Of a stretch of DNA of 64,000 nucleotides, positions 24,474-50,795 are shown piece after piece. The notes under the pieces are model-generated. The model saw only the letters and a program-made list of their open reading frames with translations. It had not been told where the DNA came from and searched no databases. Location: assembly GCF_902713615.1 (NCBI RefSeq), contig NC_052158.1, positions 39,609,729 to 39,673,728 on the forward strand. Direction: 5' to 3'. The position numbers and the translations under genes are program-made. Numbering within the stretch: position 1 is the stretch's first letter; each line of letters begins with the position of its first letter. This DNA is from Scyliorhinus canicula (taxonomy: Eukaryota).

Positions 24474-24517
24474 TCAGTCCTTAATGGGAGCAATTTTGTA
24501 GATCACACTTTGTAAAT
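24474..24517 (-). CDS. MHC class I terminal exon, cytoplasmic tail DLQSVIYKIAPIKD*
   Basis: Strong acceptor CTAACTGACATTTATTTTACTTCTGCAG|, phase 1 compatible, YxxA motif, TGA at 24476-24474. An extra small cytoplasmic exon cannot be excluded. Confidence 0.72.
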
Positions 24518-27500
24518 CTGCAGAAGTAAAATAAATGTCAGTTAGAATGGGGAATAATCCATTATCAGAGAGTGAGAACACAACAAGTGTGAGGGAATGG
24601 AGATTGTGTGAGAAATACTCATTCCCACACTCCCATCCATCCTTACACTTTATGGAGATCCATTAGATCTCTTCCATACCATCCATATTCAGTAGGTGAG
24701 GATGTGAGTGTGTGTGGTGGGTTTAAGACCAGAAGAACATGAGACATAAGAGCTGAATTAGGCCACTCGGCCCATCGAGTCTGCTCTGCCATTCCACCAT
24801 GGCTGATGTTTTTGTCATCCCAGTTCTCCTGCCTTATCCCCATGACCCCTGATCCCCTTATTAATCAAGAACCTATCTGTCTCTGTCTTAAAGCCACTCA
24901 GTGATTTGGCCTCCACAGCCTTCTGCGGCAAAGAGTTCCACAGATTCACTACTGTCTGGCTCAAGAAATTCTTCATCATCTCAGTTCTAAAGGATCATCC
25001 CTTCAGTCTGAGGCTGTTCCTTCAGGTTCCAGTTTTTCATGTTTCCAGTGGAAACATCCTCTCCATGTCCACTCTATCCAGTCCTCACAGAAACTGTAAG
25101 TTTCAATAAGATCACCCCTCATCCTTCCAAACTCAAATGAGTACTCACCCGCTCCTCATACTCCAAGCTTTTCATCATTTTTATGAATTTCCTCTGGACC
25201 CTTTCCAAGGCCAGCACATCCTTCCTTAGATACAGGGCCTAAAACTGCTCACAATACTCCAAATGGGATGACCTGTACGCCCACACTCACTCTGTCCCCT
25301 CAGTTCTACATTCCCCTCTCTCTCTCTCTCTCTCCCCTCTCAGTGTCCTGTACTCCCAGTACTGGGGATTCCCCCACACTCACTCTGTCCCCCTCAGTTC
25401 TACATTCCCCTCTCTCTCCCCTCTCAGTGTCCTGTACTCCCAGTACTGGGGATTCCCCCCACACTCACTCTGTCCCCTCAGTTCTACATTCCCCTCTCTC
25501 TCTCTCTCTCTCCCCTCTCAGTGTCCTGTACTCCCAGTACTGGGGATACCCCCACACTCACTCTGTCCCCTCAGTTCTACATTCCCCTCTCTCTCTCTCT
25601 CCCTTCTCAGTGTCCTGTACTCTCAGTACTGGAGATTCCCCCACACTCACTCTGTCCCCTCAGTTCTACATTCCCCTCTCTCTCTCTCTCCCCTCTCACT
25701 GTCCTGTACTCCCAGTACTGGGGATTCCCCCCACACTCACTCTGTCCCCTCAGTTCTACATTCCCCTCTCTCTCTCTCCCCTCTCAGTGTCCTGTACTCC
25801 CAGTACTGGGGATTCCCCCACACTCACTCTGTGCCCTCAGTTCTACATTCCCCTCTCTCTCCCCTCTCAGTGTCCTGTACTCCCAGTACTGGGGATTCCC
25901 CCACACTCACTCTGTCCCCCTCAGTTCTACATTCCCCTCTCTCTCCCCTCTCAGTGTCCTGTACTCCCAGTACTGGGGATTCCCCCCACACTCACTCTGT
26001 CCCCTCAGTTCTACATTCCCCTCTCTCCCCTCAGTGTCCTGTACTCCCAGTACTGGGGATTCCCCCCACACTCACTCTGTCCCCCCAGTTCTACATTCCC
26101 CTCTCTCTCCCCTCTCAGTGTCCTGTACTCCCAGTACTGGGGATTCCCCCCACACTCACTCTGTCCCCCCAGTTCTACATTCCCCTCTCTCTCCCCTCTC
26201 AGTGTCCTGTACTCCCAGTACTGGGGATTCCCCCCACACTCACTCTGTCCCCCCAGTTCTACATTCCCCTCTCTCTCCCCTCTCAGTGTCCTGTGCACCC
26301 AGTACTGGGGATTCCCCCCACTCACTCTGTCCCCTCAGTTCTACATTCCCCTCTCTATCCCCTCTCAGTGTCCTGTACTCCCAGTACTGGGGATTCCCCC
26401 ACACTCACTCTGTCCCCTCAGTTTTATATTCCCAGCTCTTTGATCCTCACCTCTCCGTATTCTTTTCCAGATGATTATTCCGATTATCCCGACAATAACA
26501 GCCAGTGCCATGATCACTGATCCGATTATAATTCCAAGATTGGCGTATCCCCCACTGTTTCCTGGGAATTCTGAAACACATGTGAATAATATGAGGATTG
26601 TCTCTGTTCCCGGATCCATTCCCGGTTCTGTGTTAATTGGGGACAATTTGAACTGAAGCCGCCCATTGGGAATTGATGGGATTGGTGGGAACGTTGGTTG
26701 TACACTCGCCCGATTTTACTCTCCAGTGAAGTCACTAAAGATTCCCATTGATGGGATGTCAAAGCCGTGTTTTCCCAATCCCGTGGGTTACCTTCCCGGC
26801 CAGTTCAGTTCTAATTCTCCCCAATGTCTCTGTGTCCTGTCCTTGCTCAATCTCCAGGGTAACATTGTACGGCCCAGGATGCAGCATCACAGATGGGATT
26901 CACATCAAACTTCAAAGGGATGAGGAATAAACTGACCACAGGAAACTGGGCTGAGCTGATAATGAGGAAAACAACAGATAAACAGAACAAACTCTTCAAA
27001 AGAAGCACTTGGTACAATCCAACAGCAGAACTTAGTCCTAACCGACTGCAGTGAAGCCACCATGGTCAACACAAGGAATAAGTGAGAGAATCCAACTCAA
27101 AGAAAAGATTCATAAATGTCCAGAGATTGAGTTCCAGACACTTAGACAAGAATCAGCTGATCAAAGAGAGACAGGATGGATCTGTGATGGGGGCTCATGT
27201 CTGATTAATCTCATTGAATTTGATGAAGATCTCACTGACATGGTGGATAAGGGAATGTCTATGGATCTGCTCCAGATGGACTTCCATAGGGTGAATGATT
27301 AAGGGCAGCATTCTCCGTCCCATCACACCAGTTTTTGGGTGCAGCGCACCCCTGCCAGCAGCGGGATTCTCCATCCCACCAGCCGGCCAATGGGGTTTCC
27401 CATAGTGGGCAGTCCAACGCCATCGGGAATCCCCGGGTGTGGGTGCGCTGCCGGCACAACAGAGAATCCCGCCAGCGGAGAATCCAGCCCAAGGTTTCAC

Positions 27501-30500
27501 ACAAGGATTTGTGACAATAACCAGAGTGTTTGGAAATGGAGGGAATGTTTGATAAGGGGTGAAAATTGATTGATCTGTGGGGGACAGGGACAGAAACACG
27601 TATACACCGTCACACAGACACACACTCACGCGTATATATGCACACACACATATACACAGACATACATATGCACATACACATGCACTGTCACATACAAACA
27701 CACATATGCATACACAACACATACATAAACACAGACACGCACATGCAAACGGACACATACTTACACACACACATACACATGTACACACACAGTAACACAC
27801 ACATGGATACAGAAATCCACACATACATGCACACACACCGGCCCACACACACATGCACATATGCACAGACATATTCACACACATGCACACAGACACATGC
27901 ACACACATGCACATGCGCACACACTCACAGAACCACACATACATGCATACACAGACACACACATACATACACAACGCAAATAGACACATACACACACACA
28001 CACAGGCCCACACACATGGACACACACTCACAAATGCGCATACACATGGACACACGCTCACAGACACACACACATACACTCACACACAAACACCACTCTC
28101 ACACAAACACAAGCACACACAGGCATAAACTCAGACACACACATCATACACAGTCTGAGCCACACACAAACATGCCTGCATTCACACAAACACACACACC
28201 ATATTGTATACAAAGACACACACATGCACACAGGCACACAAACACGAATGAACACAGTTTCACAAACACGCACAAACACACCATTATGACACCCTGGGTA
28301 GTACGCGGTCAATTCCAGCCCTACCCGTCCTGGAGTTGCCGCACGTGAATTAACACTAATAATTCTTCTAAAAATAGCCAAAGTCTTTGGCCTTGGCTGC
28401 CCAGTCATGTAAATTTAAACAGAATTAGTGTTCATGAAAAACAAAACAAAAAGATGACTTACGCAGTAAATAAAGCTGCTCGATGAGAAATTATACCTGA
28501 CTCCCCATTTAACTGTCCCATCCTCTCGCCACATCCATAAGACAGACAAACACAGAGAGGTGGAAAGGGGTAAAACTAATAAGGATGCAGGTCAAAAGAT
28601 AAGAGTCCTTGCTTCAGATGATGATTTATTTAGTGCACTGTCTTCACAGTATGAGTGTGGATTATAGTCTCTAACGTACAGCTTGTAAGGATCTTCCTTG
28701 CATTCAGCAATATCTGACTCACAGCTTTTACAGGAGACACCCCTGGCATCACATCAGCCTGTTCTGCAGAGAGAGTTATCAGGGCCGGGATTCTGTGCAT
28801 CAGCCTGTTCTGCAGAGAGAGTTATCAGGGCCGGGATTCTGTGCATCAGCCTGTTCTGCAGAGAGAATTATCAGGGCCCGGATTCTGCTTGCATCAGCCT
28901 GTTCTGCAGAGAGAGTTATCGGGTTCTGGACTCTGCTTGCATCAGCCTGTTCTGCAGAGAGATTAATCAGGTTCTGGATTCTGCTTGCATCAGCCTGTTC
29001 TGTAGAAACAGTTATCAGGGCCGGGATTCTGCTTGAATCAGGTTGTTCTGCAGAAAGGGTTATCAGGTTCTGGATTCTGCATGCATCAGCCTGTTCTGCA
29101 GAGAGAGTTATCAGGGCCGGGATTCTGCTTGCATCAGCCTGTTCTGTAGAAACAGTTATCAGGGCCGGGAGTCTGCTTGAATCAGGTTGTTCTGCAGAAA
29201 GGGTTATCAGGTTCTGGATTCTGCATGCATCAGCCTGTTCTGCAGAGAGAGTTATCAGGGCCGGGATTCTGCTTGCATCAGCCTGTTCTGCAGAGAGAGT
29301 TATCAGGTTCTGGATTCTGCTTGCATCAGCCTGTTCTGCAGAGAGAGTTATCAGGTTCTGGATTCTGCTTGCATCAGCCTGTTCTACAGAGAGAGTTATC
29401 AGGGCCGGGATTCTGCTTGCATCAGCCTGTTCTGCAGAGAGATTAATCAGGTTCTGGATTCTGCATGCATCAGCCTGTTCTGCAGAGAGAGTTATCAGGG
29501 CCGGGAGTCTGCTTGAATCAGGTTGTTCTGCAGAAAGGGTTATCAGGTTCTAGATTCTGCTTGCATCAGCCTGTTCTGCAGAGAGTGTAATCAGGTTCTG
29601 GATTCTGCTTGAATCAGGTTGTTCTGTAGAAACAGTTATCAGGGCCGGGATTCTGCTTGCATCAAACTGTTCTGCAGAGAGAGTTATCAGGTTCTGGATT
29701 CTGCTTGCATCAGCCTGTTCTGCAGAGAGAGTTATCAGGGCCGGGATTCTGCTTGCATCAGCCTGTTCTGCAGAGAGAGTTATCAGGTTCTGGATTCTGC
29801 ATGCATCAGCCTGTTCTGCAGAGAGAGTTATCAGGTTCTGGATTCTGCTTGCATCAGCCTGTTCTGCAGAGAGAGTTATCAGGGCCGGGATTCTGTGCAT
29901 CAGCCTGTTCTGCAGAGAGAATTATCAGGGCCGGGATTCTCCCCTACCCGGCAGGGCGGGGGGTCCCGGCATACCGGAGTGGCGAGAACTACTCCGGCGT
30001 TGGGCCTCCCGAAAGGTGCGGAATTCTACGCACCTTTAGGGGCTAGGCCCGCGCTGGAGTGCTTGGCGCCCCGCCGACTGATGCGAACGGCCTTTGGCGC
30101 CCCGCCGACTGGCGCCAGGGCTGGCCGAAAGGATTCTGCTCGCATCAGCCTGTTCCGCAGAAAGAGTTGGTTCCCACAGTGGCCTTTTGATGAGAATTAG
30201 CCGGTTATTATAGGAGAAAGCAGAATGGGAAAAAGAAAGGGTTGCTTTCTCTGCTGACAAAGTGAAACTATTGGGGCAGCACGGTAGCATGGTGGTTAGC
30301 ATAAATGCTTCACAGCTCTAGGGTCCCAGGTTCAGTTCCCGACTGGGTCACTGTCTGTGCGGAGTCTGCACGTCCTCCCCGTGTGTGCGTGGGTTTCCTC
30401 CGGGTGCTCCGGTTTCCTCCCACAGTCCAAAGACGTGCGGATTAGGTGGATTGGCCATGCTAAATTGCCCGTAGTGTCCTAAAAAGTAAGGTTAAGGGGG

Positions 30501-33500
30501 GGATTGTTGGGTTACGGGTATAGGGTGGATGCGTGGGTTTGAGTGGGGTGATCATTGCTCGGCACAACATCGAGGGCCGAAGGGCCTGTTCTGTGCTGTA
30601 CTGTTCTATGTTCTATGTTCTATGGGAAGCATGGTAGCACAGTGGTTAGCACAGTCGCTTCACAGCTCCAGGGTCCCAGGTTTGGTTCCCGGCTGGGTCA
30701 CTATCTGTGCGGAGTCTGCACGTTCTCCCCATGTCTGCGTGTGTTTCCTCCGGGTGCTCCGGTTTCCTCACGCAGTCCAAAGACATGCAGTTTAGGTGGA
30801 TTGGCCATGCTAAATTGCCCTTAGTGTCCAAAAGGTGGGGGTTACTGGATTATGGGGAGAGGGTGGAGGTGTGGACTTGGTAGGGTGCTCTTTCTAAGGG
30901 CTAGTGCAGACTCAATGGGCCGAATGGCCTCCTTCTGCACTGTAAATGCTATGATTCTATGAAAGCTCTTTAGGTCTCTGAAACATTTCAGTGGGAACAG
31001 ACCCAATCACCACCTGTTACCAGACAGAACACCGTGTTTTAGGCCAATTCATTGACCACCAGCCAAATCAGTCAAAACGAGGCATCACTGATCCCACCAG
31101 CCACTGAAATCTTCTGCTTTCATTAAAGGCACAGGCCACTGCTTTCTTCTGCTTGAATTAACAATAAAGGCTGCCTTTACTGACAAACGTCCATCAATCA
31201 TCCATGGATCAAAAATCTGACAGCAAATAAAAGAAACGGGAAATAAGGGAATAAACAGGGAGCAAACAGGAGGGACTGTTAAAAAATACATACACAGACT
31301 CATGTACACACAAATACACACAGACTGAAACACATGCACACACAGACACACATAAGACTCACATACATACAAATACACATGTGCAGACATGCAAACATAC
31401 CACATAGTGCAATTCCTTACCCCACTGATGGAGCTTGGGCTCTGCCAGGCTGCTGTGTTCAATTTGACAGGAGTATTGATCCTCATCCCCAGCATTTATT
31501 TCAATCTCTTTCTGGATCTGATGGCTCCCATCGTGGTTCGGTCGAAGCCCCGAGGATTGTGTCTCAGACATTACCTCTCCATTCCTTAGCCAGGTCACCT
31601 CGATGTCTACAGGATAAAAGCCAGTAACCAGGCAGGAGAGAGTGAGCGGCTTGTACTGACTATTGGCCTCACTTCTGGAGATGAAGACTTCAGGCTGAAC
31701 TGTAATGGGAAAGGGTGAAAACACAAACAATAGACAGACACTGAATGGAATGGGAGAACGGTTTGATAGATCAGTGAAGTTAGATCAGAACATGGATCAA
31801 AACTCAAATCAATACCTTTCCGTCCAAAATATTCCTTTCCAGCTTCTAAATATCTGTTCAAATGTTGAACAAATACTCCTTGAAGATATGTTTCCCAGTA
31901 GCTGTTCCAGGATTGATCCGAATCCCATTTTTCTTTCGTCTTCAATGCAATGGGATTGGTTGCGACCCATCTCATTCTGTCCGGCTCTAAACTAATATAA
32001 TCCTTTCCATCAAATCCAAACCTCATCGATATCTTACAGGAGCCGTCTTCACTGACCTCGACAGACCGAATCCATTGAAAAATGTGAATTCCTGTCAGAG
32101 ACAACAGAATCGATAATCATTCTTATGGGAAATTGAAGCAGAAATGGGGAGATTCAGTCATCAAAGTCAGTGCTGGGGGACTGAGTGCAGTGTCCCAGGG
32201 GTCAGTGCTGGGAGACTGAGTGCAGTGTCCCAGGGGTCAGTGCTGGGGGACTGAGTGCAGTTTCTCAGTGGTCAGTGCTGGGGGACTGAGTGCAGTGTCC
32301 CAGGGGTCAGTGCTGGGGGACTGAGTGCAGTGTCCCAGGGGTCAGTGCTGGGGGACTGAGTGCAGTGTCCAAGGGGTCAGTGCTGGGGGACTGAGTGCAG
32401 TGTCCCAGGGGTCAGTGCTGGGGGACTGAGTGCAGTGTCCCAGGGGTCAGTGCTGGGGGACTGAGCGCAGTGTCCCAGGGGTCAGTGCTGGGGGATGGAC
32501 TGTGTGCAGTGTCCCAGGGGTCAGTGCTGGGGGACTGAGTGCAGTGCCCCAGGGATCAGTGCTGGGGGACTGAGTGCAGTGTCCCAGGGGTCAGTGCTGG
32601 GGGACTGAGTGCAGTGTCCCACGGGTCAGTGCTGGGAGATGGACTGAGTGCAGTGTCCCAGAGGTCAGTGCTGGGGGACTGAGTGCAGTGTCCCAGGGGT
32701 CAGTGCTGGGGGACTGAGTGCAGTGTCCCAGGGGTCAGTGCTGGGGGACTGAATGCAGTGTCGCAGGGGTCAGTGCCGGGGGACTAAGTGCAGTGTCCCA
32801 GGGGTCAGTGCTGGGGGACTGAGTGCAGTGTCCCAGGGGTCAGTGCTGGGAGACAGAGTGCAGTGTCCCAGAGGTCAGTGCTGGGGGACTGAGTGCAGTG
32901 TCCCAGGGGTCAGTGCTGGGGGACTGAGTGCAGTGTCCCAGGGATCAGTGCTGTGGGACTGAGTGAAGTGTCCCAGGGGTCAGTGCTGGGGGACTGAGTG
33001 CAGTGTCCCAGGGGTCAGTGCTGGGGGACTGAGTGCAGTGTCCCAGGGATCAGTGCTGGGGGGCTGAGTGCAGTGTCCCAGGGGTCAGTGCTGGGAGATG
33101 GACTGAGTGCAGTGTCGCAGGGGCCAGTGCTGGGGGACTGAGTGCAGTGTCCCAGGGGTCAGTGCTGGGGGATGGGCTGAGTGCAGTGTCCCAGGGGTCA
33201 GTGCTGGGGGACTGAGTGCAGTGTCCCAGGGGTCAGTGCTGGGGGACTGAGTGCAGTGTCCCAGGGGTCAGTGCTGGGAGACTGAGTGCGGTGTCCCAGG
33301 GGTCAGTGCTGGGGGACTGAGTGCAGTGTCCAAGGGGTCAGTGCTGGGGGACTGAGTGCAGTGTCCCAGGGGTCAGTGCTGGGAGACTGAGTGCAATGTC
33401 CCAGGGGTCAGTGCTGGGGGACTGAGTGCGGTGTCCCAGGGGTCAGTGCAGGGGGACTGAGTGCAGTGTCCCAGGGATCAGTGCTGGGGGACTGAGTGCA

Positions 33501-36500: not shown

Positions 36501-39500
36501 CTGAGTGCAGTGTCCCAGGGTTCAGTAGCTGGGAGATGGACTGAGTGCAGTGTCCCAGGGGTCAGTGCTGGGAGACTGAGTAGCAGTGTCCCAGGGGTCA
36601 GTGCTGGGGGACTGAGTGCAGTGTCCCAGGGGTCAGTGCTGGGGGACTGAGTGCAGTGTCCCAGGGGTCAGTGCTGGGGATGGACTGAGTGCAGTGTCCC
36701 AGGGATCAGTGCTGGGGGACTGAGTACAGTGTCCCAGGGGTCAGTGCTGGGGGACTGAGTGCAGTGTCCCAGGGGTCAGTGCTGGGAGATGGACTGAGTG
36801 TAGTGTCCCAGGGGTCAGTGCTGGGGGACTGAATGCAGTGTCGCAGGGGTCAGTGCTGGGAGACTGAGTGCAGTGTCCCAGGGGTCAGTGCTGGGAGACA
36901 GAGTGCAGTGTCCCAGGGGTCAGTGCTGGGGGACTGAGTGCAGTGTCCCAGGGGTCAGTGCTGGAGATGGACTGAGTGTAGTGTCCCAGGGGTCAGTGCT
37001 GGGGGACTGAATGCAGTGTCGCAGGGGTCAGTGCTGGGAGACTGAGTGCAGTGCCCCAGGGGTCAGTGCTGGGGGACTGAGTGCAGTGTCCCAGGTATCA
37101 GTGCTGGGGGACTGAGTGCAGTGTCCCAGTGGTCAGTGCTGGGGGACTGAGTGCAGTATCCCAGGGGTCAGTGCTGGGGGGACTGAGTGCAGTGTCCCAG
37201 GGGTCAGTGCTGGGGGACTGAGTGCCGTGTCCCAGGGGTCAGTGCTGGGGGACTGAGTGCAGTGTCCCAGGGATCAGTGCTGGGAGATGGACTGAGTGCA
37301 GTGTCGCAGGGGTCAGTGCTGGGGGACTGAGTGCAGTGTCCCAGGGGTCAGTGCTGGGAGATGGACTGAGTGCAGTGTCCCAGGGGTCAGTGCTGGGAGA
37401 TGGACTGAGTGCAGTGTCCCAGGGGTCAGTGCTGGGGGACTGAGTGCAGTGTCCCAGGGGTCAGTGCTGGGGGACTGAGTGCAGTGTCCCAGGGGTCAGT
37501 GCTGGGGGACTGAGTGCAGTGTCCCATGGGGTCAGTGCTGGGAGACTGAGTGCAGTGTCCCAGGGGTCAGTGCTGGGGGACTGAGTGCGGTGTCCCAGGG
37601 GTCAGTGCAGGGGGACTGAGTGCAGTGTCCCAGGGATCAGTGCTGGGGGACTGAGTGCAGTGTCCCAGGGATCAGTGCTGGGGGACTGAGTGCAGTGTCC
37701 CAGGGGTCAGTGCTGGGGGACTGAGTGCAGTGTCCCAGGGGTCAGTGCTGGGGGACTGAGTGCAGTGTCCCAGGGATCAGTGCTGGGGGACTGAGTGCAG
37801 TGTCCCAGGGGTCAGTGCTGGAGGACTGAGTGCAGTGTCCCAGGGGTCAGTGCTGGGGGACTGAGTGCAGTGTCCCAGGGATCAGTGCTGGGGGGCTGAG
37901 TGCAGTGTCCCAGGGGTCAGTGCTGGGGGACTGAGTGCAGTGTCCCAGGGGTCAGTGCAGGGGGACTGAGTGCAGTGTCCCAGGGGTCAGTGCTGGGGGA
38001 TGGGCTGAGTGCAGTGTCCCAGGGGTCAGTACTGGGAGATGGACTGACTGCAGTGTCCCAGGGATCAGTACTGGGAGACTGAGTACAGTGCCCAGGGGTC
38101 AGTGCTGGGGGACTGAGTGCAGTGTCCCAGGGGTCAGTGCTGGGGGGCTGAGTGCAGTGTCCCAGGGTCAGTGCTGGGGGACTGAGTGCAGTGTCCCAGG
38201 GGTCAGTGCTGGGGGACTGAGTGCAGTGTCCCAGGGAATCAGTGCTGGGGGATGGCCTGAGTGCAGTGTCCCAGGGGTCAGTGCTGGGGGGACTGAGTGC
38301 AGTGTCCCAGGGGTCAGTGCTGGGGGACTGAGTGCAGTATCCCAGGGGTCAGTGCTGGGGACTGAGTGCAGTGTCCCAGGGGTCAGTGCTGGGGGATGGG
38401 CAGAGTGCAGTGTTGCAGGGGTCACTGCTTGGGGACTGAGTGCAGTGTCCCAGGGGTCAGTGCTGGGGAGGGACTGAGTGCAGTGTCCCAGGGTCAGTGC
38501 TGGGGGACTGTGCAGTGTCCCAGGGGTCAGTGCTGGGGGTCTGAGTGCAGTGTCCCAGGGGTCAGTGCTGGGGGACCTGAGTGCAGTGTCCCAGGGGTCA
38601 GTGCCTGGGGACTGAGTGCAGTGTCCCAGGGATCAGTGCTGGGGGGACTGAGTGCAGTGTCCCAGGGGTCAGTGCTGGGGGACTGAGTGCAGTGTCCCAG
38701 GGGTCAGTGCTGGGAGATTGACTGAGTGCAGTGTCCCAGGGGTCAGTGCTGGGGGACTGAGTGCAGTGTCCCAGGGGTCAGTGCTGGGGGACTGAGTGCA
38801 GTGTCCCAGGGGTCAGTGCTGGGGAGACTGAGTGCAGTGTCCCAGGGGTCAGTGCTGGGGGACTGAGTGCAGTGTACCAGGGGTCAGTGCTGGGCGACTG
38901 AGTACGGTGTCCCAGGGGTCAGTGCTGGGGGACTGAGTGCAGTGTCCCAGGGGTCAGTGCTGGGAGACTGAGTGCAGTGTCCCAGGGGTCAGTGCTGGGG
39001 GACTGAGTGCAGTGTCCCAGGGGTCAGTGCTGGGGATGGACTGAGTGCAGTGTCCCAGGGGTCAGTGCTGGGGGACTGAGTGCAGTGTCCCAGGGATCAG
39101 TGCTGGGGGACTGAGTGAAGTGTCCCAGGGGTCAGTGCTGGGGGACTGAGTGCAGTGTCCCAGGGGTCAGTGCTGGGGGACTGAGTGCAGTGTACCAGGG
39201 ATCAGTGCTGGGGGGCTGAGTGCAGTGTCCCAGGGGTCAGTGCTGGGAGATGGACTGAGTGCAGTGTCGCAGGGGCCAGTGCTGGGGGACTGAGTGCATT
39301 GTCCCAGGGGTCAGTGCTGGAGGATGGGCTGAGTGCAGTGTCCCAGGGGTCAGTGCTGGGGGACTGAGTGCAGTGTCCCAGGGGTCTGTGCTGGGAGACT
39401 GAGTGCGGTGTCCCAGGGGTCAGTGCTGGGGGACTGAGTGCAGTGTCCAAGGGGTCAGTGCTGGGGGACTGAGTGCAGTGTCCCAGGGGTCAGTGCTGGG

Positions 39501-42500
39501 AGACTGAGTGCAATGTCCCAGGGGTCAGTGCTGGGGGACTGAGTGCGGTGTCCCAGGGATCAGTGCTGGGGGACTGAGTGCAGTGTCCCAGGGATCAGTG
39601 CTGGGGGACTGAGTGCAGTGTCCCAGGGGTCAGTGCTGGGGGACTGAGTGCAGTGTCCCAGGGGTCAGTGCTGGGGGACTGAGTGCAGTGTCCCAGGGGT
39701 CAGTGCTGGGAGGGACTGAGTGCAGTGTCCCAGGGTCAGTGCTGGGGGACTGAGTGCAGTGTCCCAGGGGTCAGTGCTGGGGGACTGAGTGCAGTGTCCC
39801 AGGGGTCAGTGCTGGGGGACTGAGTGCAGTGTCCCAGGGGTCAGTGCTGGGGGACTGAGTGCAGTGTCCCAGGGGTCAGTGCTGGGGGACTGAGTGCAGT
39901 GTCCCAGGGGTCAGTGCTGGGGGACTGAGTGCAGTGTCCCAGGGGTCAGTGCTGGGGGACTGAGTGCAGTGTCCCAGGGGTCAGTGCTGGGATGGACTGA
40001 GTGCAGTGTCCCAGGGGTCAGTGCTGGGGGACTGAGTGCAGTGTCCCAGGGGTCAGTGCTGGGGGACTGAGTGCAGTGTCCCAGGGGTCAGTGCTGGGAG
40101 ACTGAGTGCAGTGTCCCAGGGGTCAGTNNNNNNNNNNNNNNNNNNNNNNNNNNNNNNNNNNNNNNNNNNNNNNNNNNNNNNNNNNNNNNNNNNNNNNNNN
40201 NNNNNNNNNNNNNNNNNNNNNNNNNNNNNNNNNNNNNNNNNNNNNNNNNNNNNNNNNNNNNNNNNNNNNNNNNNNNNNNNNNNNNNNNNNNNNNNNNNNN
40301 NNNNNNNNNNNNNNNNNNNNNNNNNNNNNNNNNNNNNNNNNNNNNNNNNNNNNNNNNNNNNNNNNNNNNNNNNNNNNNNNNNNNNNNNNNNNNNNNNNNN
40401 NNNNNNNNNNNNNNNNNNNNNNNNNNNNNNNNNNNNNNNNNNNNNNNNNNNNNNNNNNNNNNNNNNNNNNNNNNNNNNNNNNNNNNNNNNNNNNNNNNNN
40501 NNNNNNNNNNNNNNNNNNNNNNNNNNNNNNNNNNNNNNNNNNNNNNNNNNNNNNNNNNNNNNNNNNNNNNNNNNNNNNNNNNNNNNNNNNNNNNNNNNNN
40601 NNNNNNNNNNNNNNNTGCAGTGTCCCAGGGGTCAGTGCTGGGGGACTGAGTGCAGTGTCCCAGGGGTCAGTGCTGGGGGACTGAGTGCAGTGTCCCAGGG
40701 GTCAGTGCTGGGGGACTGAGTGCAGTGTCCCAGGGGTCAGTGCTGGGGGACTGAGTGCAGTGTCCCAGGGGTCAGTGCTGGGGGACTGAGTGCAGTGTCC
40801 CAGGGGTCAGTGCTGGGGGACTGAGTGCAGTGTCCCAGGGGTCAGTGCTGGGGGACTGAGTGCAGTGTCCCAGGGGTCAGTGCTGGGGGACTGAGTGCAG
40901 TGTCCCAGGGGTCAGTGCTGGGGGACTGAGTGCAGTGTCCCAGGGGTCAGTGCTGGGGACTGAGTGCAGTGTCCCAGGGGTCAGTGCTGGGGGACTGAGT
41001 GCAGTGACCCAGGGGTCAGTGCTGGGGGACTGAGTGCAGTGTCCCAGGGGTCAGTGCTGGGGGACTGAGTGCAGTGTCCAGGGGTCAGTGCTGGGGGACT
41101 GAGTGCAGTGTCCCAGGGGTCAGTGCTGGGGGACTGAGTGCAGTGTCCCAGGGGTCAGTGCTGGGATGGACTGAGTGCAGTGTCCCAGGGGTCAGTGCTG
41201 GGGGACTGAGTGCAGTGTCCCAGGGGTCAGTGCTGGGGGACTGAGTGCAGTGTCCCAGGGGTCAGTGCTGGGGGACTGAGTGCAGTGTCCCAGGGGTCAG
41301 TGCTGGGGGACTGAGTGCAGTGTCCCAGGGGTCAGTGCTGGGGGACTGAGTGCAGTGTCCCAGGGGTCAGTGCTGGGGGACTGAGTGCAGTGTCCCAGGG
41401 GTCAGTGCTGGGGGACTGAGTGCAGTGTCCCAGGGGTCAGTGCTGGGGGACTGAGTGCAGTGTCCCAGGGGTCAGTGCTGGGGGACTGAGTGCAGTGTCC
41501 CAGGGGTCAGTGCTGGGGGACTGAGTGCAGTGTCCCAGGGGTCAGTGCTGGGGGACTGAGTGCAGTGTCCCAGGGGTCAGTGCTGGGGGACTGAGTGCAG
41601 TGTCCCAGGGGTCAGTGCTGGGGGACTGAGTGCAGTGTCCCAGGGGTCAGTGCTGGGGGACTGAGTGCAGTGTCCCAGGGGTCAGTGCTGGGGGACTGAG
41701 TGCAGTGTCCCAGGGGTCAGTGCTGGGGGACTGAGTGCAGTGTCCCAGGGGTCAGTGCTGGGGGACTGAGTGCAGTGTCCCAGGGGTCAGTGCTGGGGGA
41801 CTGAGTGCAGTGTCCCAGGGGTCAGTGCTGGGGGACTGAGTGCAGTGTCCCAGGGGTCAGTGCTGGGGGACTGAGTGCAGTGTCCCAGGGGTCAGTGCTG
41901 GGGGACTGAGTGCAGTGTCCCAGGGGTCAGTGCTGGGGGACTGAGTGCAGTGTCCCAGGGGTCAGTGCTGGGGGACTGAGTGCAGTGTCCCAGGGGTCAG
42001 TGCTGGGGGACTGAGTGCAGTGTCCCAGGGGTCAGTGCTGGGGGACTGAGTGCAGTGTCCCAGGGGTCAGTGCTGGGGGACTGAGTGCAGTGTCCCAGGG
42101 GTCAGTGCTGGGGGACTGAGTGCAGTGTCCCAGGGGTCAGTGCTGGGGGACTGAGTGCAGTGTCCCAGGGGTCAGTGCTGGGGATGACTGAGTGCAGTGT
42201 CCCAGGGGTCAGTGCTGGGAGGACTGAGTGCAGTGTCCCAGGGGTCAGTGCTGGGGGACTGAGTGCAGTGTCCCAGGGGTCAGTGCTGGGGGACTGAGTG
42301 CAGTGTCCCAGGGGTCAGTGCTGGGGGACTGAGTGCAGTGTCCCAGGGGTCAGTGCTGGGGGACTGAGTGCAGTGTCCCAGGGGTCAGTGCTGGGAGGAC
42401 TGAGTGCAGTGTCCCAGGGGTCAGTGCTGGGGGACTGAGTGCAGTGTCCCAGGGGTCAGTGCTGGGGGACTGAGTGCAGTGTCCCAGGGGTCAGTGCTGG

Positions 42501-45500
42501 GGGACTGAGTGCAGTGTCCCAGGGGTCAGTGCTGGGGGACTGAGTGCAGTGTCCCAGGGGTCAGTGCTGGGGGACTGAGTGCAGTGTCCCAGGGGTCAGT
42601 GCTGGGGGACTGAGTGCAGTGTCCCAGGGGTCAGTGCTGGGGGACTGAGTGCAGTGTCCCAGGGGTCAGTGCTGGGGGACTGAGTGCAGTGTCCCAGGGG
42701 TCAGTGCTGGGGGACTGAGTGCAGTGTCCCAGGGGTCAGTGCTGGGGGACTGAGTGCAGTGTCCCAGGGGTCAGTGCTGGGGGACTGAGTGCAGTGTCCC
42801 AGGGGTCAGTGCTGGGGGACTGAGTGCAGTGTCCCAGGGGTCAGTGCTGGGGGACTGAGTGCAGTGTCCCAGGGGTCAGTGCTGGGGGACTGAGTGCAGT
42901 GTCCCAGGGGTCAGTGCTGGGGGACTGAGTGCAGTGTCCCAGGGGTCAGTGCTGGGGGACTGAGTGCAGTGTCCCAGGGGTCAGTGCTGGGGGACTGAGT
43001 GCAGTGTCCCAGGGGTCAGTGCTGGGGGACTGAGTGCAGTGTCCCAGGGGTCAGTGCTGGGGGACTGAGTGCAGTGTCCCAGGGGTCAGTGCTGGGGGAC
43101 TGAGTGCAGTGTCCCAGGGGTCAGTGCTGGGGGACTGAGTGCAGTGTCCCAGGGGTCAGTGCTGGGGGACTGAGTGCAGTGTCCCAGGGGTCAGTGCTGG
43201 GGGACTGAGTGCAGTGTCCCAGGGGTCAGTGCTGGGGGACTGAGTGCAGTGTCCCAGGGGTCAGTGCTGGGGGACTGAGTGCAGTGTCCCAGGGGTCAGT
43301 GCTGGGGGACTGAGTGCAGTGTCCCAGGGGTCAGTGCTGGGGGACTGAGTGCAGTGTCCCAGGGGTCAGTGCTGGGGGACTGAGTGCAGTGTCCCAGGGG
43401 TCAGTGCTGGGGGACTGAGTGCAGTGTCCCAGGGGTCAGTGCTGGGGGACTGAGTGCAGTGTCCCAGGGGTCAGTGCTGGGGGACTGAGTGCAGTGTCCC
43501 AGGGGTCAGTGCTGGGGGACTGAGTGCAGTGTCCCAGGGGTCAGTGCTGGGGGACTGAGTGCAGTGTCCCAGGGGTCAGTGCTGGGGGACTGAGTGCAGT
43601 GTCCCAGGGGTCAGTGCTGGGGATGGACTGAGTGCAGTGTCCCAGGGGTCAGTGCTGGGGGACTGAGTGCAGTGTCCCAGGGGTCAGTGCTGGGGGACTG
43701 AGTGCAGTGTCCCAGGGGTCAGTGCTGGGATGGACTGAGTGCAGTGTCCCAGGGGTCAGTGCTGGGGGACTGAGTGCAGTGTCCCAGGGGTCAGTGCTGG
43801 GGGACTGAGTGCAGTGTCCCAGGGGTCAGTGCTGGGGGACTGAGTGCAGTGTCCCAGGGGTCAGTGCTGGGGGACTGAGTGCAGTGTCCCAGGGGTCAGT
43901 GCTGGGGGACTGAGTGCAGTGTCCCAGGGGTCAGTGCTGGAGTGGACTGAGTGCAGTGTCCCAGGGGTCAGTGCTGGGGGACTGAGTGCAGTGTCCCAGG
44001 GGTCAGTGCTGGGGGACTGAGTGCAGTGTCCCAGGGGTCAGTGCTGGGGGACTGAGTGCAGTGTCCCAGGGGTCAGTGCTGGGGGACTGAGTGCAGTGTC
44101 CCAGGGGTCAGTGCTGGGGGATGGACTGAGTGCAGTGTCCCAGGGGTCAGTGCTGGGGGACTGAGTGCAGTGTCCCAGGGGTCAGTGCTGGGGGACTGAG
44201 TGCAGTGTCCCAGGGGTCAGTGCTGGGGGACCTGAGTGCAGTGTCCCAGGGGTCAGTGCTGGGGGACTGAGTGCAGTGTCCCAGGGGTCAGTGCTGGGGG
44301 ACTGAGTGCAGTGTCCCAGGGGTCAGTGCTGGGGGACTGAGTGCAGTGTCCCAGGGGTCAGTGCTGGGGGACTGAGTGCAGTGTCCCAGGGGTCAGTGCT
44401 GGGGACTGAGTGCAGTGTCCCAGGGGTCAGTGCTGGGGGACTGAGTGCAGTGTCCCAGGGGTCAGTGCTGGGGGACTGAGTGCAGTGTCCCAGGGGTCAG
44501 TGCTGGGGGACTGAGTGCAGTGTCCAGGGGTCAGTGCTGGGGGACTGAGTGCAGTGTCCCAGGGGTCAGTGCTGGGGGACTGAGTGCAGTGTCCCAAGGG
44601 TTAGTGCTGGGGGACAGAGTGCAGTGTCCCAGGGGTCAGTGTTGGGGGACTGAGTGCAGTGTCCCAGTGGTCAGTGCTGGGAGATCGACTGAGTGCAGTG
44701 TCCCAGGGGTCAGTGCTGGGAGATGGACTGAGTGCAGTGTCCCAGGGGTCAGTGCTGGGAGATGGACTGAGTGCTGTGTCCCAGTGGTCAGTGCTGGGGG
44801 CTGTGCAGTGTCCCAGAGGTCAGTGCTGGGGGATGGACTGAGTGCAGTGTCCCAGGGGTCAGTGCTGGGGGACTGAGTGCAGTGTCCCAAGGGTTAGTGC
44901 TGGGTGATGGACTGAGTGCAGTGTCCCAGGGGTCAGTGCTTGGGGACTGAGTGTAGTGTCCCAGGGGTCAGTGCTGGGTGATGGACTGAGTGCAGTGTCC
45001 CACGGGACAGTGCTAGGGGACTGAGTGCAGTGTCCCAAGGGTTAGTGCTGGGGGACTGAGTGCGGTGTCCCAGGGGTCAGTGCTGGGGGACTGAGTGCAG
45101 TGTCCCAGGGGTCAGTGCTGGGGGACTGAGTGCAGTGTCCCAGGGGTCAGTGCTGGGGGACTGAGTGCAGTGTCCCAGGGGTCAGTGCTGGGGGACTGAG
45201 TGCAGTGTCCCAGGGGTCAGTGCTGGGGGACTGAGTGCAGTGTCCCAGGGGTCAGTGCTGGGAGGACTGAGTGCAGTGTCCCAGGGGTCAGTGCTGGGGG
45301 ACTGAGTGCAGTGTCCCAGGGGTCAGTGCTGGGGGACTGAGTGCAGTGTCCCAGGGGTCAGTGCTGGGGACTGAGTGCAGTGTCCCAGGGGTCAGTGCTG
45401 GGGGACTGAGTGCAGTGTCCCAGGGGTCAGTGCTGGGGGACTGAGTGCAGTGTCCCAGGGGTCAGTGCTGGGGGACTGAGTGCAGTGTCCCAGGGGTCAG

Positions 45501-47167
45501 TGCTGGGGGACTGAGTGCAGTGTCCCAGGGGTCAGTGCTGGGGATGGACTGAGTGCAGTGTCCCAGGGGTCAGTGCTGGGCGACTGAGTGCAGTGTCCCA
45601 GGGGTCAGTGCTGTGGGACTGAGTGCAGTGTCCCAGGGGTCAGTGCTGGGGGCTGAGTGCAGTGTCCCAGGGGTCAGTGCTGTGGGACTGAGTGCAGTGT
45701 CCCAGGGGTCAGTGCTGTGGGACTGAGTGCAGTGTCCCAGGGGTCAGTGCTGTGGGACTGAGTGCAGTGTAAGGATGTCAATCGACACAGAGTTTCTATC
45801 TTCCTGATCTTACCGGATGTCTGGTTTGTGATCTTCATTATTGTATCCAGCTTCTCCTTTGCCATGTTTGAATGTATGTTCACCAGATCTGTGATATAGT
45901 CCCAGTGTGTCACATTGAAATAATCAGCCATGAATTGCTGCCTGGGAATACAGCGACGGATATTACTGTCACTATAACCTATTTGGACACCATTGATTAT
46001 CGCGACAGTTGTAACATCAGGAAAATCCTCAATTCCGGAGACGATAGTATATATCACTGTGTGAGTGTTGGTGTCTGTAAAAGAAACAGTTCAGTTAACT
46101 GTTTAAGAAACACCAAACGATAAACAGAATAATCTAGCTGGAGTTCACTGAGCAGAATAATAGCAGAAACCTCCGGAGTATCACAAACACGGTGAAAGTC
46201 AATGTAAACGTGTCAGTGTCTGTAAAATAACTGAATAATGAGGGTTGAAAACAGAATTATGCAGATGCTCCAAACCTGAATTTGTGACAGAAATTTCTGG
46301 AAAACACAGGAGATTGGGTGGTATGTGTGCGGAGAAACCAAGTTAATATTTCGAGTCCGTATGATTCAACATAGAGTCTTTATTTAGCACTGCTGCCCGG
46401 ACCCGGGTTAAAGAGCGGTCCATCCACACACAGACAATCTCCAATTGTCCACCACTTTATCACAATGTCAGAATCCTGTCTGATATTGAAACAGAATCAG
46501 ATTAAACTGGGTCACAATTAGATGCTGCAGCCTCTCAGAACAGGGAGTAAACACAGAATCAGTCACTCAGGACTGGGCTGTTATCATCTTTGCTGTAATC
46601 TCTTTGTAAACACAGCAGCTTTATGTCACTGGGAGAGAAGTCCATCATGTGATTCAGTTTCAGTTTTACTGTTGGCTATGAGCAGAACGCCACACGGTGG
46701 GGAGAGGGGGTGGGGGAGACAGTCACTGTGTGAACAGTCTCTCTGTCAAACTGGGATGGTCAATCCAGAGCAGGATCTCCACTGTCCTTCACACAGCTTT
46801 TTAATCTCCCCTTTATACATCGTCACTAGGATGTTGGTGGTCTGAGATAACCTGACCTATTCAACCATGAGGGCATCACAGCTGATCCTGGGGTGGGTGA
46901 AACATGGATTATCCTTCTCCTCTCCGTCGTATTTTGACACAAATCCCATCAGAGTCTGACACACTGTGCTGACTTCAATGGTGTCAGATATCAGGCTGGC
47001 TGTATAACAGGCATCTGATCAAATATCACCCATTTCAAACTCTCCCCAAAAGATTCACATTAACCCCAGAGAGAGTGAGAGAGAGTGAGAATGGAAGAGT
47101 GAATTCTGTACTTACCGGGAGAGACCCAGGAAAAACACAGGGAGATGGAGAAAAGGATCAGCAACAT
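24474..47167 (-). CDS. Non-classical MHC class I heavy chain, 343 aa, six coding exons
   Basis: join(47116-47167, 45814-46074, 31816-32091, 31421-31699, 26451-26570, 24474-24517) = 1032 nt, open throughout, all junctions phase 1 with GT-AG. Domains in order: leader, alpha1, alpha2, alpha3 (C1-Ig), TM, cytoplasmic. Confidence 0.92.
24735..25275 (-). mobile_element. CR1-type LINE 3' fragment in the last intron
   Basis: Reverse complement of the same 3' text as 12900-13330 (TTCTTATG-like tail, AATTTCTT...GTAGTGAATCTGTGGAA). Confidence 0.8.
25280..26435. repeat. About 84-bp minisatellite (about 13-14 units) in intron 5
   Basis: Unit CTCAGTGTCCTGTACTCCCAGTACTGGGGATTCCCCCCACACTCACTCTGTCCCCTCAGTTCTACATTCCC(CT)n. 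Period 84 measured at 26041/26125/26209. Contains the palindrome CCCAGTACTGGG. Confidence 0.95.
26451..26570 (-). CDS. MHC class I exon 5, connecting peptide + transmembrane
   Basis: 120 nt between TTTCAG| and |GTGAG: EFPGNSGGYANLGIIIGSVIMALAVIVGIIGIIIWKRIRR, a hydrophobic span followed by a basic stop-transfer. Confidence 0.9.
27303..27490. mobile_element. Short TIR element of the GGGCGGGATTCTCC family
   Basis: GGGCAGCATTCTCC ... GGAGAATCCAGCCC imperfect 14-bp TIRs. Confidence 0.55.
27595..28285. repeat. Degenerate (CA)n low-complexity tract
   Basis: CACA/TACA-rich. Produces spurious Cys/Val and His/Thr ORFs. Confidence 0.95.
28750..29940. repeat. 48-bp minisatellite (about 25 units) in intron 4
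   Basis: Unit GCATCAGCCTGTTCTGCAGAGAGAGTTATCAG(GGCCG/GTTCT)GGATTCTGCTT. Period 48 (29227/29275). Confidence 0.95.
29929..30135. mobile_element. Truncated GC-rich TIR element (5' end only)
   Basis: Starts GGGCCGGGATTCTCCCCTACC, GC-rich, and is followed by one more 48-bp repeat unit. Confidence 0.6.
30273..30623 (+). mobile_element. HE1-type SINE, full length
   Basis: GGGGCAGCACGGTAGCATGGTGGTTAGC head, GGTTCAGTTCCC B box, family core and (TTCTATG)n tail. Confidence 0.9.
30624..30961 (+). mobile_element. HE1-type SINE, tandem second copy
   Basis: Begins immediately after the tail of the previous copy, with the same head, core and CTGCACTGTAAAT..CTATGATTCTATG tail. Confidence 0.9.
31421..31699 (-). 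CDS. MHC class I exon 4, alpha3 C1-set Ig domain
   Basis: 279 nt between TTACAG| and |GTAAG. Contains LSCLVTGFYPVDIEVTW, PNHDGSHQ and YSCQIEHSSL, with both Ig cysteines present. Confidence 0.97.
31816..32091 (-). CDS. MHC class I exon 3, alpha2 domain
   Basis: 276 nt between TGACAG| and |GTATT: GIHIFQWIRSVEVSEDGSCKISMRFGFDGKDYISLEPDRMRWVATNPIALKTKEKWDSDQSWNSYWETYLQGVFVQHLNRYLEAGKEYFGRK. Confidence 0.95.
32166..45770. repeat. 35-bp satellite filling MHC intron 2 (about 375 sequenced units plus gap)
   Basis: Unit CTGAGTGCAGTGTCCCAGGGGTCAGTGCTGGGGGA, with 39-bp variants carrying GATGG. Confidence 0.98.
40128..40615. other. Assembly gap (488 N) inside the satellite
   Basis: Run of N. The true array length is unknown. 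Confidence 1.
45814..46074 (-). CDS. MHC class I exon 2, alpha1 domain
   Basis: 261 nt between TTACAG| and |GTAAG: DTNTHTVIYTIVSGIEDFPDVTTVAIINGVQIGYSDSNIRRCIPRQQFMADYFNVTHWDYITDLVNIHSNMAKEKLDTIMKITNQTS. Shows class I DS, IPRQ, W60 and NQT(86) motifs. Confidence 0.92.
47116..47167 (-). CDS. MHC class I exon 1, signal peptide MLLILFSISLCFSWVSP
   Basis: ATG at 47167, 52 nt, hydrophobic, ends G|GTAAG, and lies directly downstream of the TATA/X-Y promoter. Confidence 0.88.
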
Positions 47168-47396: not shown

Positions 47397-47438
47397 AAGA
47401 TCAAACTGAGACAGAGAGAGATTCAGGAAGTGAATTCA

Positions 47439-50609: not shown

Positions 50610-50795
50610 ACCTGTCCTGGACACAAATCCCATCAGAGTCTGACACACTGTGCTGACTTCAATGGTGTCAGATATCAGGCTGGCTGTATAACAGGCGTCT
50701 GATCAAATATCACCCATTTCAAACTCTCCCCAAAAGATTCACATTAACCCCAGAGAGAGAGAGAGTGAGAATGGAAGAATGAATTCTGTACTTAC

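What the first reader, a model, noticed from the sequence alone, without database searches (positions are those of the whole stretch)
24474..47167. Intact but strongly divergent shark MHC class I gene, lineage unassigned
Seen: six exons of canonical size and phase with no stops, an intact promoter and a poly(A) signal. Beta2m-contact motifs are kept (alpha2 Q96, FDGKDY; alpha3 PNHDGSHQ), as are the H93/D119 pair and the N86 glycan site. Established: cartilaginous fish have a classical UAA lineage and several non-classical lineages (UBA, UCA, UDA, UEA). Inference: this is a functional non-classical gene, possibly of the multigene UEA/UCA type or a distinct sublineage. It would be easily missed or split by annotation because alpha1 and alpha2 are separated by a gapped satellite.
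Basis: partly seen in the sequence, partly recalled or inferred. Interest (0 to 1): 0.7.

Follow-up and report, generated by a model that had tools for sequence, protein, structure and literature searches.

The report
Catshark UEA-type class I gene model
This is an already annotated small-spotted catshark member of a large, shark-only family of non-classical MHC class I genes, and RNA data suggest that its two halves, which lie either side of a gapped satellite, are not normally spliced into one message.

Summary
The six exons, their phase-1 junctions and the 343-aa open frame are real. The product is identical to RefSeq XP_038671284.1 of Scyliorhinus canicula, so annotation neither missed nor split it.

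The protein sits inside a strongly supported clade of 82 proteins from 13 shark species, with no ray or chimaera. This multicopy family lost the alpha2 disulfide and is most likely the described UEA lineage. No sequence named UEA was available for direct comparison. The scan has already met other members on other DNA of this genome, at -235 kb, -71 kb and +403 kb.

The alpha1-alpha2 join across the N gap is not supported:
- In four transcriptome runs from four studies, the alpha1 exon is spliced upstream to the leader exon. Downstream it runs into a canonical family tail exon (DSPSVIYTTA...) that is absent from the window, not into alpha2.
- Runs that hold all alpha1 words hold half or fewer of the alpha2 words, and the best alpha2 holders are not alpha1 holders.
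- The two domains have different nearest paralogues, and the satellite differs in character across the gap.
- Every exon is phase 1, so an in-silico chimera would also read open.

Verdict: a known family and a known gene model. Its status as one intact functional gene is doubtful. Interest is low.

The parts
47116..47167 (-). Exon 1: start codon and 17-aa signal peptide. The 5' UTR probably reaches about 47295.
   Evidence: frame, GT donor; the exon 1-exon 2 joint that skips 46075-47115 is seen in 4 runs, and an X1 contig covering 47116-47295 ends in a template-switch oligo.
45814..46074 (-). Exon 2: alpha1 domain (88 aa). It is the most gene-specific part, with at most 76% identity to any database protein.
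   Evidence: covered with 0 mismatches by one contig in each of 4 runs; pLDDT 92-96.
32092..45813 (-). Modelled intron 2: a 35-bp satellite (32166-45770) interrupted by the N gap at 40128-40615. Continuity is not shown.
   Evidence: period 35; 91% matches on the low-coordinate block, 97% on the high-coordinate block. (24-mer content differs across the gap). (N run).
31816..32091 (-). Exon 3: alpha2 domain, which lacks both disulfide cysteines (C101 is V, C164 is F).
   Evidence: (Pfam MHC_I 7e-18); no RNA-like run holds more than 0.77 of its words.
31421..31699 (-). Exon 4: alpha3 C1-set Ig domain, 99-100% identical to several catshark paralogues.
   Evidence: (C1-set 3e-18).
26451..26570 (-). 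Exon 5: connecting peptide and transmembrane helix.
   Evidence: (helix 295-334). (72-74% identical to paralogue TM exons).
24474..24517 (-). Exon 6: diverged short cytoplasmic tail (DLQSVIYKIAPIKD) plus the stop codon. It is homologous to the family's canonical DSPSVIYTTA tail exon but about 20% different in DNA.
50610..51080 (-). Second promoter-plus-leader module. The leader exon copy at 50796-50847 encodes the same signal peptide. No alpha1, alpha2 or alpha3 copy follows it.
   Evidence: tblastn; exon 1 and about 185 nt of intron 1 are nearly identical, while the upstream part is more diverged.

Best explanation
The stretch holds pieces of a catshark (Scyliorhinus canicula) non-classical MHC class I gene. 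It belongs to the shark-only multicopy family that lost the alpha2 disulfide, most likely the published UEA lineage. Joined in silico, the pieces give the 343-aa protein that RefSeq already lists as XP_038671284.1.

As a transcription unit the model does not hold up. The 5' part (promoter, leader, alpha1) is active and correctly spliced at intron 1. Its alpha1 donor is then joined to a canonical family tail exon that is not among the read letters of the window. The 3' part (alpha2, alpha3, TM and a diverged tail) is not co-expressed with it.

The likeliest reason is that the gapped 35-bp satellite separates two units. Either the gap hides more than satellite, so the scaffold brings the 5' part of one family gene next to the 3' part of another, or the transcripts come from an identical alpha1 copy elsewhere. 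A satellite-bloated gene that skips its own exons is less likely.

Shown: the exons, the family placement, the annotation identity, the intron 1 splice, the alpha1-to-tail joint, and the uncoupled word shares. Inferred: the physical arrangement behind these results.
For: - Identity to XP_038671284.1 over the same span.
- An 82-row shark-only clade on a stem of 1.07 with 99% SH-aLRT, separate from the UAA-like and UBA-like rows. It stands beside a clade that holds nurse shark QGX07421.1 and Callorhinchus.
- PMC10751288 states that UEA is the multicopy lineage of the large MHC-Ib cluster that also holds UDA and UFA.
- In each of X1-X4, one contig covers 45814-46074 without a mismatch and joins exon 1 at 47116. 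Each then runs on with the same letters. In phase 1 these read D-SPSVIYTTA, the tail found in catshark paralogues P0184 and P0239.
- That 30-mer has no match in the window with up to 3 mismatches. Only a 13-nt core is shared with exon 6.
- Alpha1 words are held at 1.00 in X1-X4 and 0.96 in X5. Alpha2 words are held at 0.50 in X3 and 0.36 in X2. X1, X4 and X5 are not alpha2 holders, and the best alpha2 holders (X25-X29) are not alpha1 holders.
- Alpha1 is nearest to P0195 (76%). Alpha2 is sister to P0227 (95%, support 96), whose own alpha1 is only 68% identical.
- The satellite is heterogeneous on the alpha2 side (410-632 distinct 24-mers per kb) and homogeneous next to the gap on the alpha1 side (35-189).
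- All exons are phase 1, so an open frame does not prove continuity.
Against: - NCBI's pipeline produced exactly this join, and the support behind that model could not be inspected here.
- The same satellite unit in the same orientation flanks both sides of the gap, as expected for one intron.
- Both halves fall in the same carcharhiniform subclade.
- The RNA evidence comes from Logan contigs, which drop rare variants and cannot show absence. The runs' RNA status is inferred from the splice joints and the template-switch oligo, not from their records.
What precedes alpha2 in transcripts is therefore unknown.
- Word shares rest on 22-23 sampled words.
- No sequence named UEA was available, so the lineage name rests on family properties and on the literature.
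Confidence: 0.55

Rival explanations
1. The locus is one intact, functional UEA gene exactly as modelled (leader, alpha1, alpha2, alpha3, TM, tail). The full-length mRNA is made in tissues or conditions not sampled, and the alpha1-to-tail contigs are an alternative, exon-skipped product or come from a near-identical copy.
For: - Clean open frame with canonical splice sites, and the identical RefSeq model.
- Confident class I fold of the joined protein: pLDDT 84 overall and 92-96 in alpha1/alpha2, with TM 0.87-0.91 (by target length) to solved class I chains.
- Beta2m-contact and glycan motifs are kept.
- The same satellite lies on both sides of the gap.
- The 2021 UEA paper, as I recall it (it could not be read here), reports weak expression for UEA genes, so low-level transcripts could be missed.
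Against: - Four independent runs all show the alpha1-to-tail joint, and none shows an alpha1-alpha2 joint.
- X1 has the deepest alpha1 contig (depth 21.5) yet is not listed among the alpha2 holders.
- The tail exon that is used is not in the window. The transcript would have to skip four good exons and more than 24 kb of retrotransposon-rich DNA.
Confidence: 0.22
2. It is one physical gene whose intron 2 has been overrun by more than 13.7 kb of satellite. The alpha2 acceptor is no longer used, and the alpha1 donor pairs with a tail exon of a downstream paralogue. This would be a gene dying through intron expansion and producing an alpha1-only message.
For: - Satellite fills more than 99% of the intron.
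- Further tandem repeats sit in introns 4 and 5.
- Merged tandem models exist in relatives, such as P0152 and P0153 with two units each. That shows either read-through between neighbouring family genes or model merging.
Against: - A weakened alpha2 acceptor should shift splicing to the alpha3 or TM acceptor, not past all of them.
- No canonical tail exon lies in the 24 kb downstream within the window.
- All exons of the 3' half remain open, and alpha3 is identical to paralogues.
Confidence: 0.15
3. It is the founder of a new, unassigned chondrichthyan class I lineage.
For: Alpha1 has at most 76% identity to any database protein and does not reach Pfam MHC_I on its own.
Against: - The whole alpha1-alpha2 region nests deep inside the 82-row family. 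Its nearest rows are at path lengths of 0.30-0.34, and identity reaches 82%.
- Alpha1 identities of 35-76% span the normal range within the family.
Confidence: 0.02

Closest known systems
UEA, the multicopy shark non-classical MHC class I lineage (Almeida et al., J Immunol 2021; mapped in Verissimo et al. 2023, PMC10751288)
   Same: - Found in sharks only, with many copies per genome.
- Located in the large MHC-Ib cluster of the MHC chromosome.
- Far from UAA and UBA on the tree.
- Several invariant peptide-anchor residues are replaced, here Y7 to V, Y59 to H and R84 to I.
- Class I exon plan with a beta2m-type alpha3 domain.
   Different: - No sequence labelled UEA could be fetched, so the name is inferred.
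- This copy keeps more anchors (T143, K146, W147, Y159, Y171) than most of the family. Y159 is kept in only 14 of 82 rows.
- Its modelled mRNA is not the one seen in RNA contigs.
[quoted passage not shown]
   Same: 100% identical over all 343 residues, and the gene span of 22,694 bp is the same.
   Different: Nothing at protein level. The generic name hides the lineage, and the model crosses the N gap.
Catshark paralogues XP_038672219.1 (P0195) and XP_038672222.1 (P0227), and S. torazame P0198
   Same: They lie in the same carcharhiniform subclade, show the same loss of the alpha2 disulfide, and have a nearly identical alpha3 (94-100%).
   Different: - Alpha1 identity is only 68-76%.
- P0195 is nearest in alpha1 whereas P0227 is nearest in alpha2.
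- P0195 and P0198 carry the canonical DSPS(G/V)IYTTA tail, and the window copy has a diverged, shorter one. The P0227 model does not reach a tail exon.
Classical shark UAA (Triakis scyllium O46840 group; nurse shark structure 6LUP)
   Same: The overall fold (TM 0.86 to 6LUP by target length), the N86 glycan site, H93, Q96, D119 and the K146/W147 pair.
   Different: About 31% identity, no C101-C164 disulfide, Y7, Y59 and R84 lost, and an alpha1 exon that is invariant in four individuals.

Membership tests
MHC class I heavy chain | Alpha1-alpha2 platform domain followed by a C1-set Ig domain and a TM anchor | tested here: met
   Pfam MHC_I 4.9e-24 (residues 34-191) and C1-set 4.6e-17. The AF2 model has mean pLDDT 84 and best PDB matches to class I chains with TM 0.87-0.91.
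MHC class I heavy chain | Exon plan: leader, alpha1, alpha2, alpha3, TM and tail, all in phase 1 | tested here: met
UEA lineage (shark non-classical class I) | Restricted to sharks (Selachii), absent from rays and chimaeras | tested here: met
   The 82 rows of the clade come from 13 shark species of six orders. The only chimaera row and the lungfish row fall outside it. This is limited to what the databases hold.
UEA lineage (shark non-classical class I) | Large multigene family within one genome | tested here: met
   Several distinct S. canicula proteins lie on the same 163-Mb chromosome. Earlier notes place further copies at -235 kb, -71 kb and +403 kb.
UEA lineage (shark non-classical class I) | Maps to the large MHC-Ib cluster together with UDA and UFA | tested here: inconclusive
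   PMC10751288 states the arrangement. The window's own position relative to UFA, UGA and class II genes is known only from unchecked scan notes. Chromosome coordinates were not returned.
UEA lineage (shark non-classical class I) | Invariant peptide-terminus anchors not conserved | tested here: met
   In the window copy Y7 is V, Y59 is H and R84 is I, while T143, K146, W147, Y159 and Y171 are kept. Family-wide, Y7 is never kept in the main residue classes, R84 is kept in 20 of 82 rows and Y159 in 14 of 82. That this is a UEA trait is recalled from the 2021 abstract, which could not be read here.
UEA lineage (shark non-classical class I) | Clusters with the published UEA reference sequences | not tested
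   No protein named UEA was returned by any search, and the two J Immunol papers are not held.
Classical class I (UAA) | Alpha2 disulfide C101-C164 and the full set of peptide-terminus anchors | tested here: not met
   C101 is V, C164 is F, and three anchors are lost.
Single functional gene as modelled (one mRNA carrying alpha1 and alpha2) | Spliced transcript joining the alpha1 donor (45814) to the alpha2 acceptor (32091) | tested here: not met
   In four runs alpha1 runs on into a tail-type exon, and alpha1 and alpha2 words are held by different runs. Contigs cannot prove absence of a rare form.

The most novel reading that the evidence does not exclude
A satellite expansion or rearrangement has split a UEA gene. 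The promoter-leader-alpha1 half now makes, as its main message in several individuals, an in-frame leader-alpha1-tail mRNA. That mRNA would encode a secreted alpha1-only polypeptide of about 125 aa. The alpha2-alpha3-TM half survives as an open but separately regulated or silent fragment, kept open by gene conversion from its paralogues.
Probability: 0.3. Interest if true: 0.4.

Novelty: already known. Interest (0 to 1): 0.22.

Why it matters
The gene family and this exact gene model are already public, so the finding adds no new lineage.

It has practical value as a caution. In tandem MHC class I families every exon is in phase 1, and introns can be filled by unassemblable satellites. A perfect open frame across an assembly gap therefore says nothing about whether the exons belong together. 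Here the transcript evidence points away from the modelled join.

If the split is real, copy-number and repertoire counts of shark UEA genes taken from RefSeq models would be slightly inflated or mis-paired. The locus would also be a tidy example of how satellites break up immune genes.

Tried and rejected
- **Alpha1 against Pfam.** Alpha1 alone gave no hit. It is recognised only within the whole protein.
- **Search for short proteins carrying this alpha1.** The search for homologous proteins with the 86-aa exon, which covers candidates of 47-150 aa, found no candidate. No annotated or predicted alpha1-tail or alpha1-alpha2 fragment could be recovered that way.
- **UEA literature.** Attempts to read the two J Immunol papers on UDA and UEA by PMC id and DOI failed because they are not held.
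- **Supplements of PMC10751288.** They flag 'MHC-Ib' genes but do not name lineages and do not list this protein accession.
- **Chromosome position.** The look-up of encoding contigs returned neither DNA nor record coordinates, so the gene could not be matched to the published catshark map.
- **The loose-end 30-mer.** A search of the window for it, and a tblastn search with paralogue tails, found only exon 6 itself.
- **Scan-notes search by sequence.** It was blank.
- **Annotated alpha1-to-tail isoforms.** A regex scan of all fetched family proteins found none.
- **'New lineage' reading.** Rejected on the trees.
- **'Classical-like peptide presenter'.** My first by-eye reading that Y7 is kept was corrected by the gapless alignment: the Tyr aligns with position 9.
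- **The N gap.** No attempt was made to fill it or look it up.
Full report
**What is there.** The gene lies on the minus strand. Anchoring on the reading frames gave six exons: 47116-47167 (leader), 45814-46074 (alpha1), 31816-32091 (alpha2), 31421-31699 (alpha3), 26451-26570 (connecting peptide and TM) and 24474-24517 (tail plus stop). Every acceptor ends in AG, every donor starts with GT, and every internal junction is in phase 1. The 1032-nt frame has no stop and gives 343 aa. On their own, alpha2 and alpha3 hit Pfam MHC_I (7e-18) and C1-set (3e-18), while alpha1 alone hits nothing. In the whole protein the MHC_I match extends over residues 34-191 and gains about 20 bits. An AlphaFold model built on a 62-sequence family alignment has mean pLDDT 84, with 92-96 across alpha1 and alpha2. 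It superposes on solved class I chains with TM 0.87-0.91 by target length.

**It is already annotated.** A full-library HMMER search with the alpha2 exon, followed by a word-index search with the best full-length hit, returned a large set of shark proteins. One of them, P0192, is 100% identical to the spliced product over all 343 residues. [quoted passage not shown] It is encoded on a 163,470,629-bp chromosome of GCA_902713615.2 over a span of 22,694 bp, exactly the span of the finding. The claim that annotation would miss or split the gene is thus refuted. RefSeq makes the same join across the gap.

**Lineage.**
- A maximum-likelihood tree of the alpha1-alpha2 region of 98 proteins puts the window's protein inside a clade of 82 rows. 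The clade sits on a stem of 1.07 changes per column with 99% SH-aLRT support.
- The clade holds only sharks: Scyliorhinus (2 species), Mustelus, Carcharodon, Cetorhinus, Chiloscyllium (2 species), Hemiscyllium, Stegostoma, Rhincodon, Heterodontus, Heptranchias and Pristiophorus.
- Outside it lie the Triakis classical UAA rows, a UAA-near group that is multicopy in Heterodontus (the expected place of UBA), and a clade joining Callorhinchus with single shark proteins. That last clade includes nurse shark QGX07421.1, 'nonclassical MHC class I antigen', and is the expected place of UDA.
- Within the big clade the window's protein sits in a carcharhiniform subclade with two catshark paralogues, one S. 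torazame protein and three Mustelus proteins (support 86).
- Verissimo et al. 2023 state that elasmobranch MHC-Ib genes all map to the MHC. One large cluster holds UDA (single copy), UEA (multicopy) and UFA, and multicopy UBA forms a separate cluster (PMC10751288). A 2025 review says UBA derives from UAA while UEA is more ancient (PMC12562908).
- A shark-only, multicopy family far from UAA therefore fits UEA. From my own memory of the 2021 J Immunol abstract, which I could not read here, UEA is confined to Selachii, has poorly conserved anchor residues and falls into three sublineages.
- No sequence carrying the name UEA was retrievable, so the name remains an inference.
- Earlier scan notes reached the same family assignment for copies at -235 kb, -71 kb and +403 kb on this chromosome, and place UFA at -430 kb. 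I treat those as leads that agree with my own tree.

**Family traits.** A gapless alignment to Triakis UAA gives the following.
- *Lost:* Y7 is V, Y59 is H, R84 is I, C101 is V and C164 is F.
- *Kept:* T143, K146, W147, Y159, Y171, N86 (NQT), H93, Q96 and D119.
- *Across the 82 family rows:* C101 is retained in one row only, so the disulfide loss is ancestral. W147 is invariant, K146 is kept in 74 rows and Y159 in only 14.
- The window's subclade is thus one of the more anchor-rich groups, with an altered A pocket (V7, H59) and an F pocket that lacks R84.
- Alpha3 is 99-100% identical to several catshark paralogues, which indicates concerted evolution. Alpha1 reaches at most 76% identity to anything.

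**The gap, tested first.**
- Intron 2 as modelled is 13,722 bp. Positions 32166-45770 are one 35-bp satellite in one orientation on both sides of the N run at 40128-40615.
- The two sides differ in character. The alpha2-side block has 410-632 distinct 24-mers per kb. The block next to the gap on the alpha1 side has 35-189. Cross-gap Jaccard similarity (0.05-0.15) is lower than the similarity within either block.
- This difference does not decide continuity.
- Because all exons are phase 1, joining the 5' half of one family gene to the 3' half of another would also give a perfect frame. The open frame is therefore no evidence of continuity.

**RNA evidence.**
- A k-mer search for the gene-specific alpha1 exon found it complete in small contig sets from five studies: X1-X4 at 1.00 and X5 at 0.96.
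- X1-X4 were laid on 45790-47300. In each run one contig of 316-339 nt covers 45814-46074 without a mismatch. It is joined to 47116 across a 1041-nt skip with GT..AG ends on the minus strand. These are therefore spliced RNAs, intron 1 is confirmed, and alpha1 is invariant in four data sets.
- An X1 contig covering 47116-47295 ends in letters that I recognise (own knowledge) as the SMART template-switch oligo. This places a cap site near 47295. That is upstream of the TATA-like motif at 47239-47244 and about 40-65 nt downstream of a CCAAT/ATTGG pair that is conserved in the second promoter copy.
- Past the alpha1 donor, all four contigs continue with the same letters. In transcript sense these read ATTCACCGAGTGTGATCTACACAACAGCTC, which in phase 1 gives D-SPSVIYTTA. 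This is not the alpha2 exon, which starts GAATTCACATTTTTC. It is the canonical cytoplasmic-tail exon of the family, found verbatim in catshark P0184 and P0239 and in S. torazame P0198.
- The 30-mer has no match in the window at up to 3 mismatches. blastn and tblastn find only the diverged exon 6, which shares a 13-nt core.
- The 24 kb downstream of the gene holds a Ty3/gypsy element, a LINE endonuclease fragment and repeats, and no tail exon.

**Uncoupled expression.**
- The alpha2 exon is not held completely by any RNA-like run.
- Among the alpha1 holders, X3 has 0.50 and X2 has 0.36 of the alpha2 words. X1 has the deepest alpha1 contig, yet X1, X4 and X5 are not alpha2 holders at all.
- The best alpha2 holders (X25-X29, 0.50-0.77) were not alpha1 holders.
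- Partial shares are what a 95%-identical paralogous alpha2 (P0227) would give.
- If both exons sat in one mRNA, their shares should go together. They do not.
- Domain-wise trees add a weaker hint. Alpha1 is nearest to P0195, while alpha2 is a supported sister (96) of P0227, whose alpha1 is only 68% identical.

**Interpretation.** The well-supported part is that this is a UEA-type family member already in RefSeq. The less certain part is the physical and transcriptional structure.
- I favour (about 0.55) that the gapped satellite separates two units. The first is an active promoter-leader-alpha1 part, whose message ends in a canonical tail exon lying in unread or other DNA. The second is an alpha2-alpha3-TM-tail part that is not co-expressed with it.
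- A solo second promoter-leader module at 50.6-51.1 kb shows that partial duplications have happened here.
- The rivals are an intact gene whose full-length mRNA was simply not sampled (about 0.22), and a single gene crippled by its satellite intron and splicing into a downstream paralogue (about 0.15).
- Contigs drop rare forms, only 22-23 words were sampled per exon, and I could not lay reads on the alpha2 side. A minor alpha1-alpha2 mRNA is therefore not excluded.

**How it would work if made.** By inference from the fold and the conserved contacts, the full chain would pair with beta2-microglobulin and reach the membrane through its TM helix. Its groove has a classical-like C-terminal end (T143, K146, W147) but a remodelled N-terminal pocket and no alpha2 disulfide, and its 14-residue tail is diverged. 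That suits a monomorphic non-classical presenter of a restricted ligand set, as proposed for UEA in general. The message actually seen (leader-alpha1-tail) has no alpha2, alpha3 or TM and could not form a class I platform.

**Verdict.** The gene and family are already known. The only new point is that the RefSeq and first-reader model is probably not the transcript that the locus makes.

Noticed in passing
window 50610-51080 (leader exon copy 50796-50847), minus strand: A second promoter-plus-leader module lies 3.7 kb upstream of the first. Exon 1 and about 185 nt of intron 1 are nearly identical, while the promoter part is more diverged but keeps the ATTGG/CCAAT pair. No alpha1, alpha2 or alpha3 copy follows it. 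Contigs cannot tell which leader copy is used, because the 26-30 nt they carry are identical in both.
   Followed up: partly
window 47116-47295: An X1 contig ends in a SMART template-switch oligo at 47295, giving a cap site 128 nt upstream of the ATG. The TATA-like motif at 47239-47244 lies inside this 5' UTR and carries a T>C variant at 47243 (plus strand) in two runs.
   Followed up: partly
window 47116-47161: Long, deep contigs (1.8-2.2 kb, depth 64-92) share 46 nt of this leader exon with one mismatch. They then continue into a different alpha1-type exon that reads VSDSLTFF... So a more highly expressed class I gene uses an almost identical signal-peptide exon.
   Followed up: no
window 25326-26433, 28752-29940, 27195-28348, 47436-47993: The gene region is riddled with other tandem repeats: an 84-bp satellite (13 copies) in intron 5, a 48-bp satellite (25 copies) and a CA/TG-rich tract in intron 4, and a 77-bp repeat (7 copies) just upstream of the promoter.
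   Followed up: no
window 18961-22685 and 53649-56836, plus strand; 9179-9907, minus strand: Two Ty3/gypsy-type elements (protease, RT, RNase H and integrase hits) flank the gene, and a LINE endonuclease fragment lies downstream. The 1280-aa ORF at 599-4441 has no Pfam hit and sits in a GC-rich (63%) stretch, so it is probably repeat-encoded.
   Followed up: partly
window 45814-46074 and 31816-32091 (protein residues 60 and 125): There are two unpaired cysteines. One is in alpha1 (RRCIPRQ) and is shared by much of the subclade. The other is in alpha2 (GSCKIS) and is shared only with P0227. An extra N-glycan sequon (NVT) sits just before position 59 and is specific to this copy.
   Followed up: no
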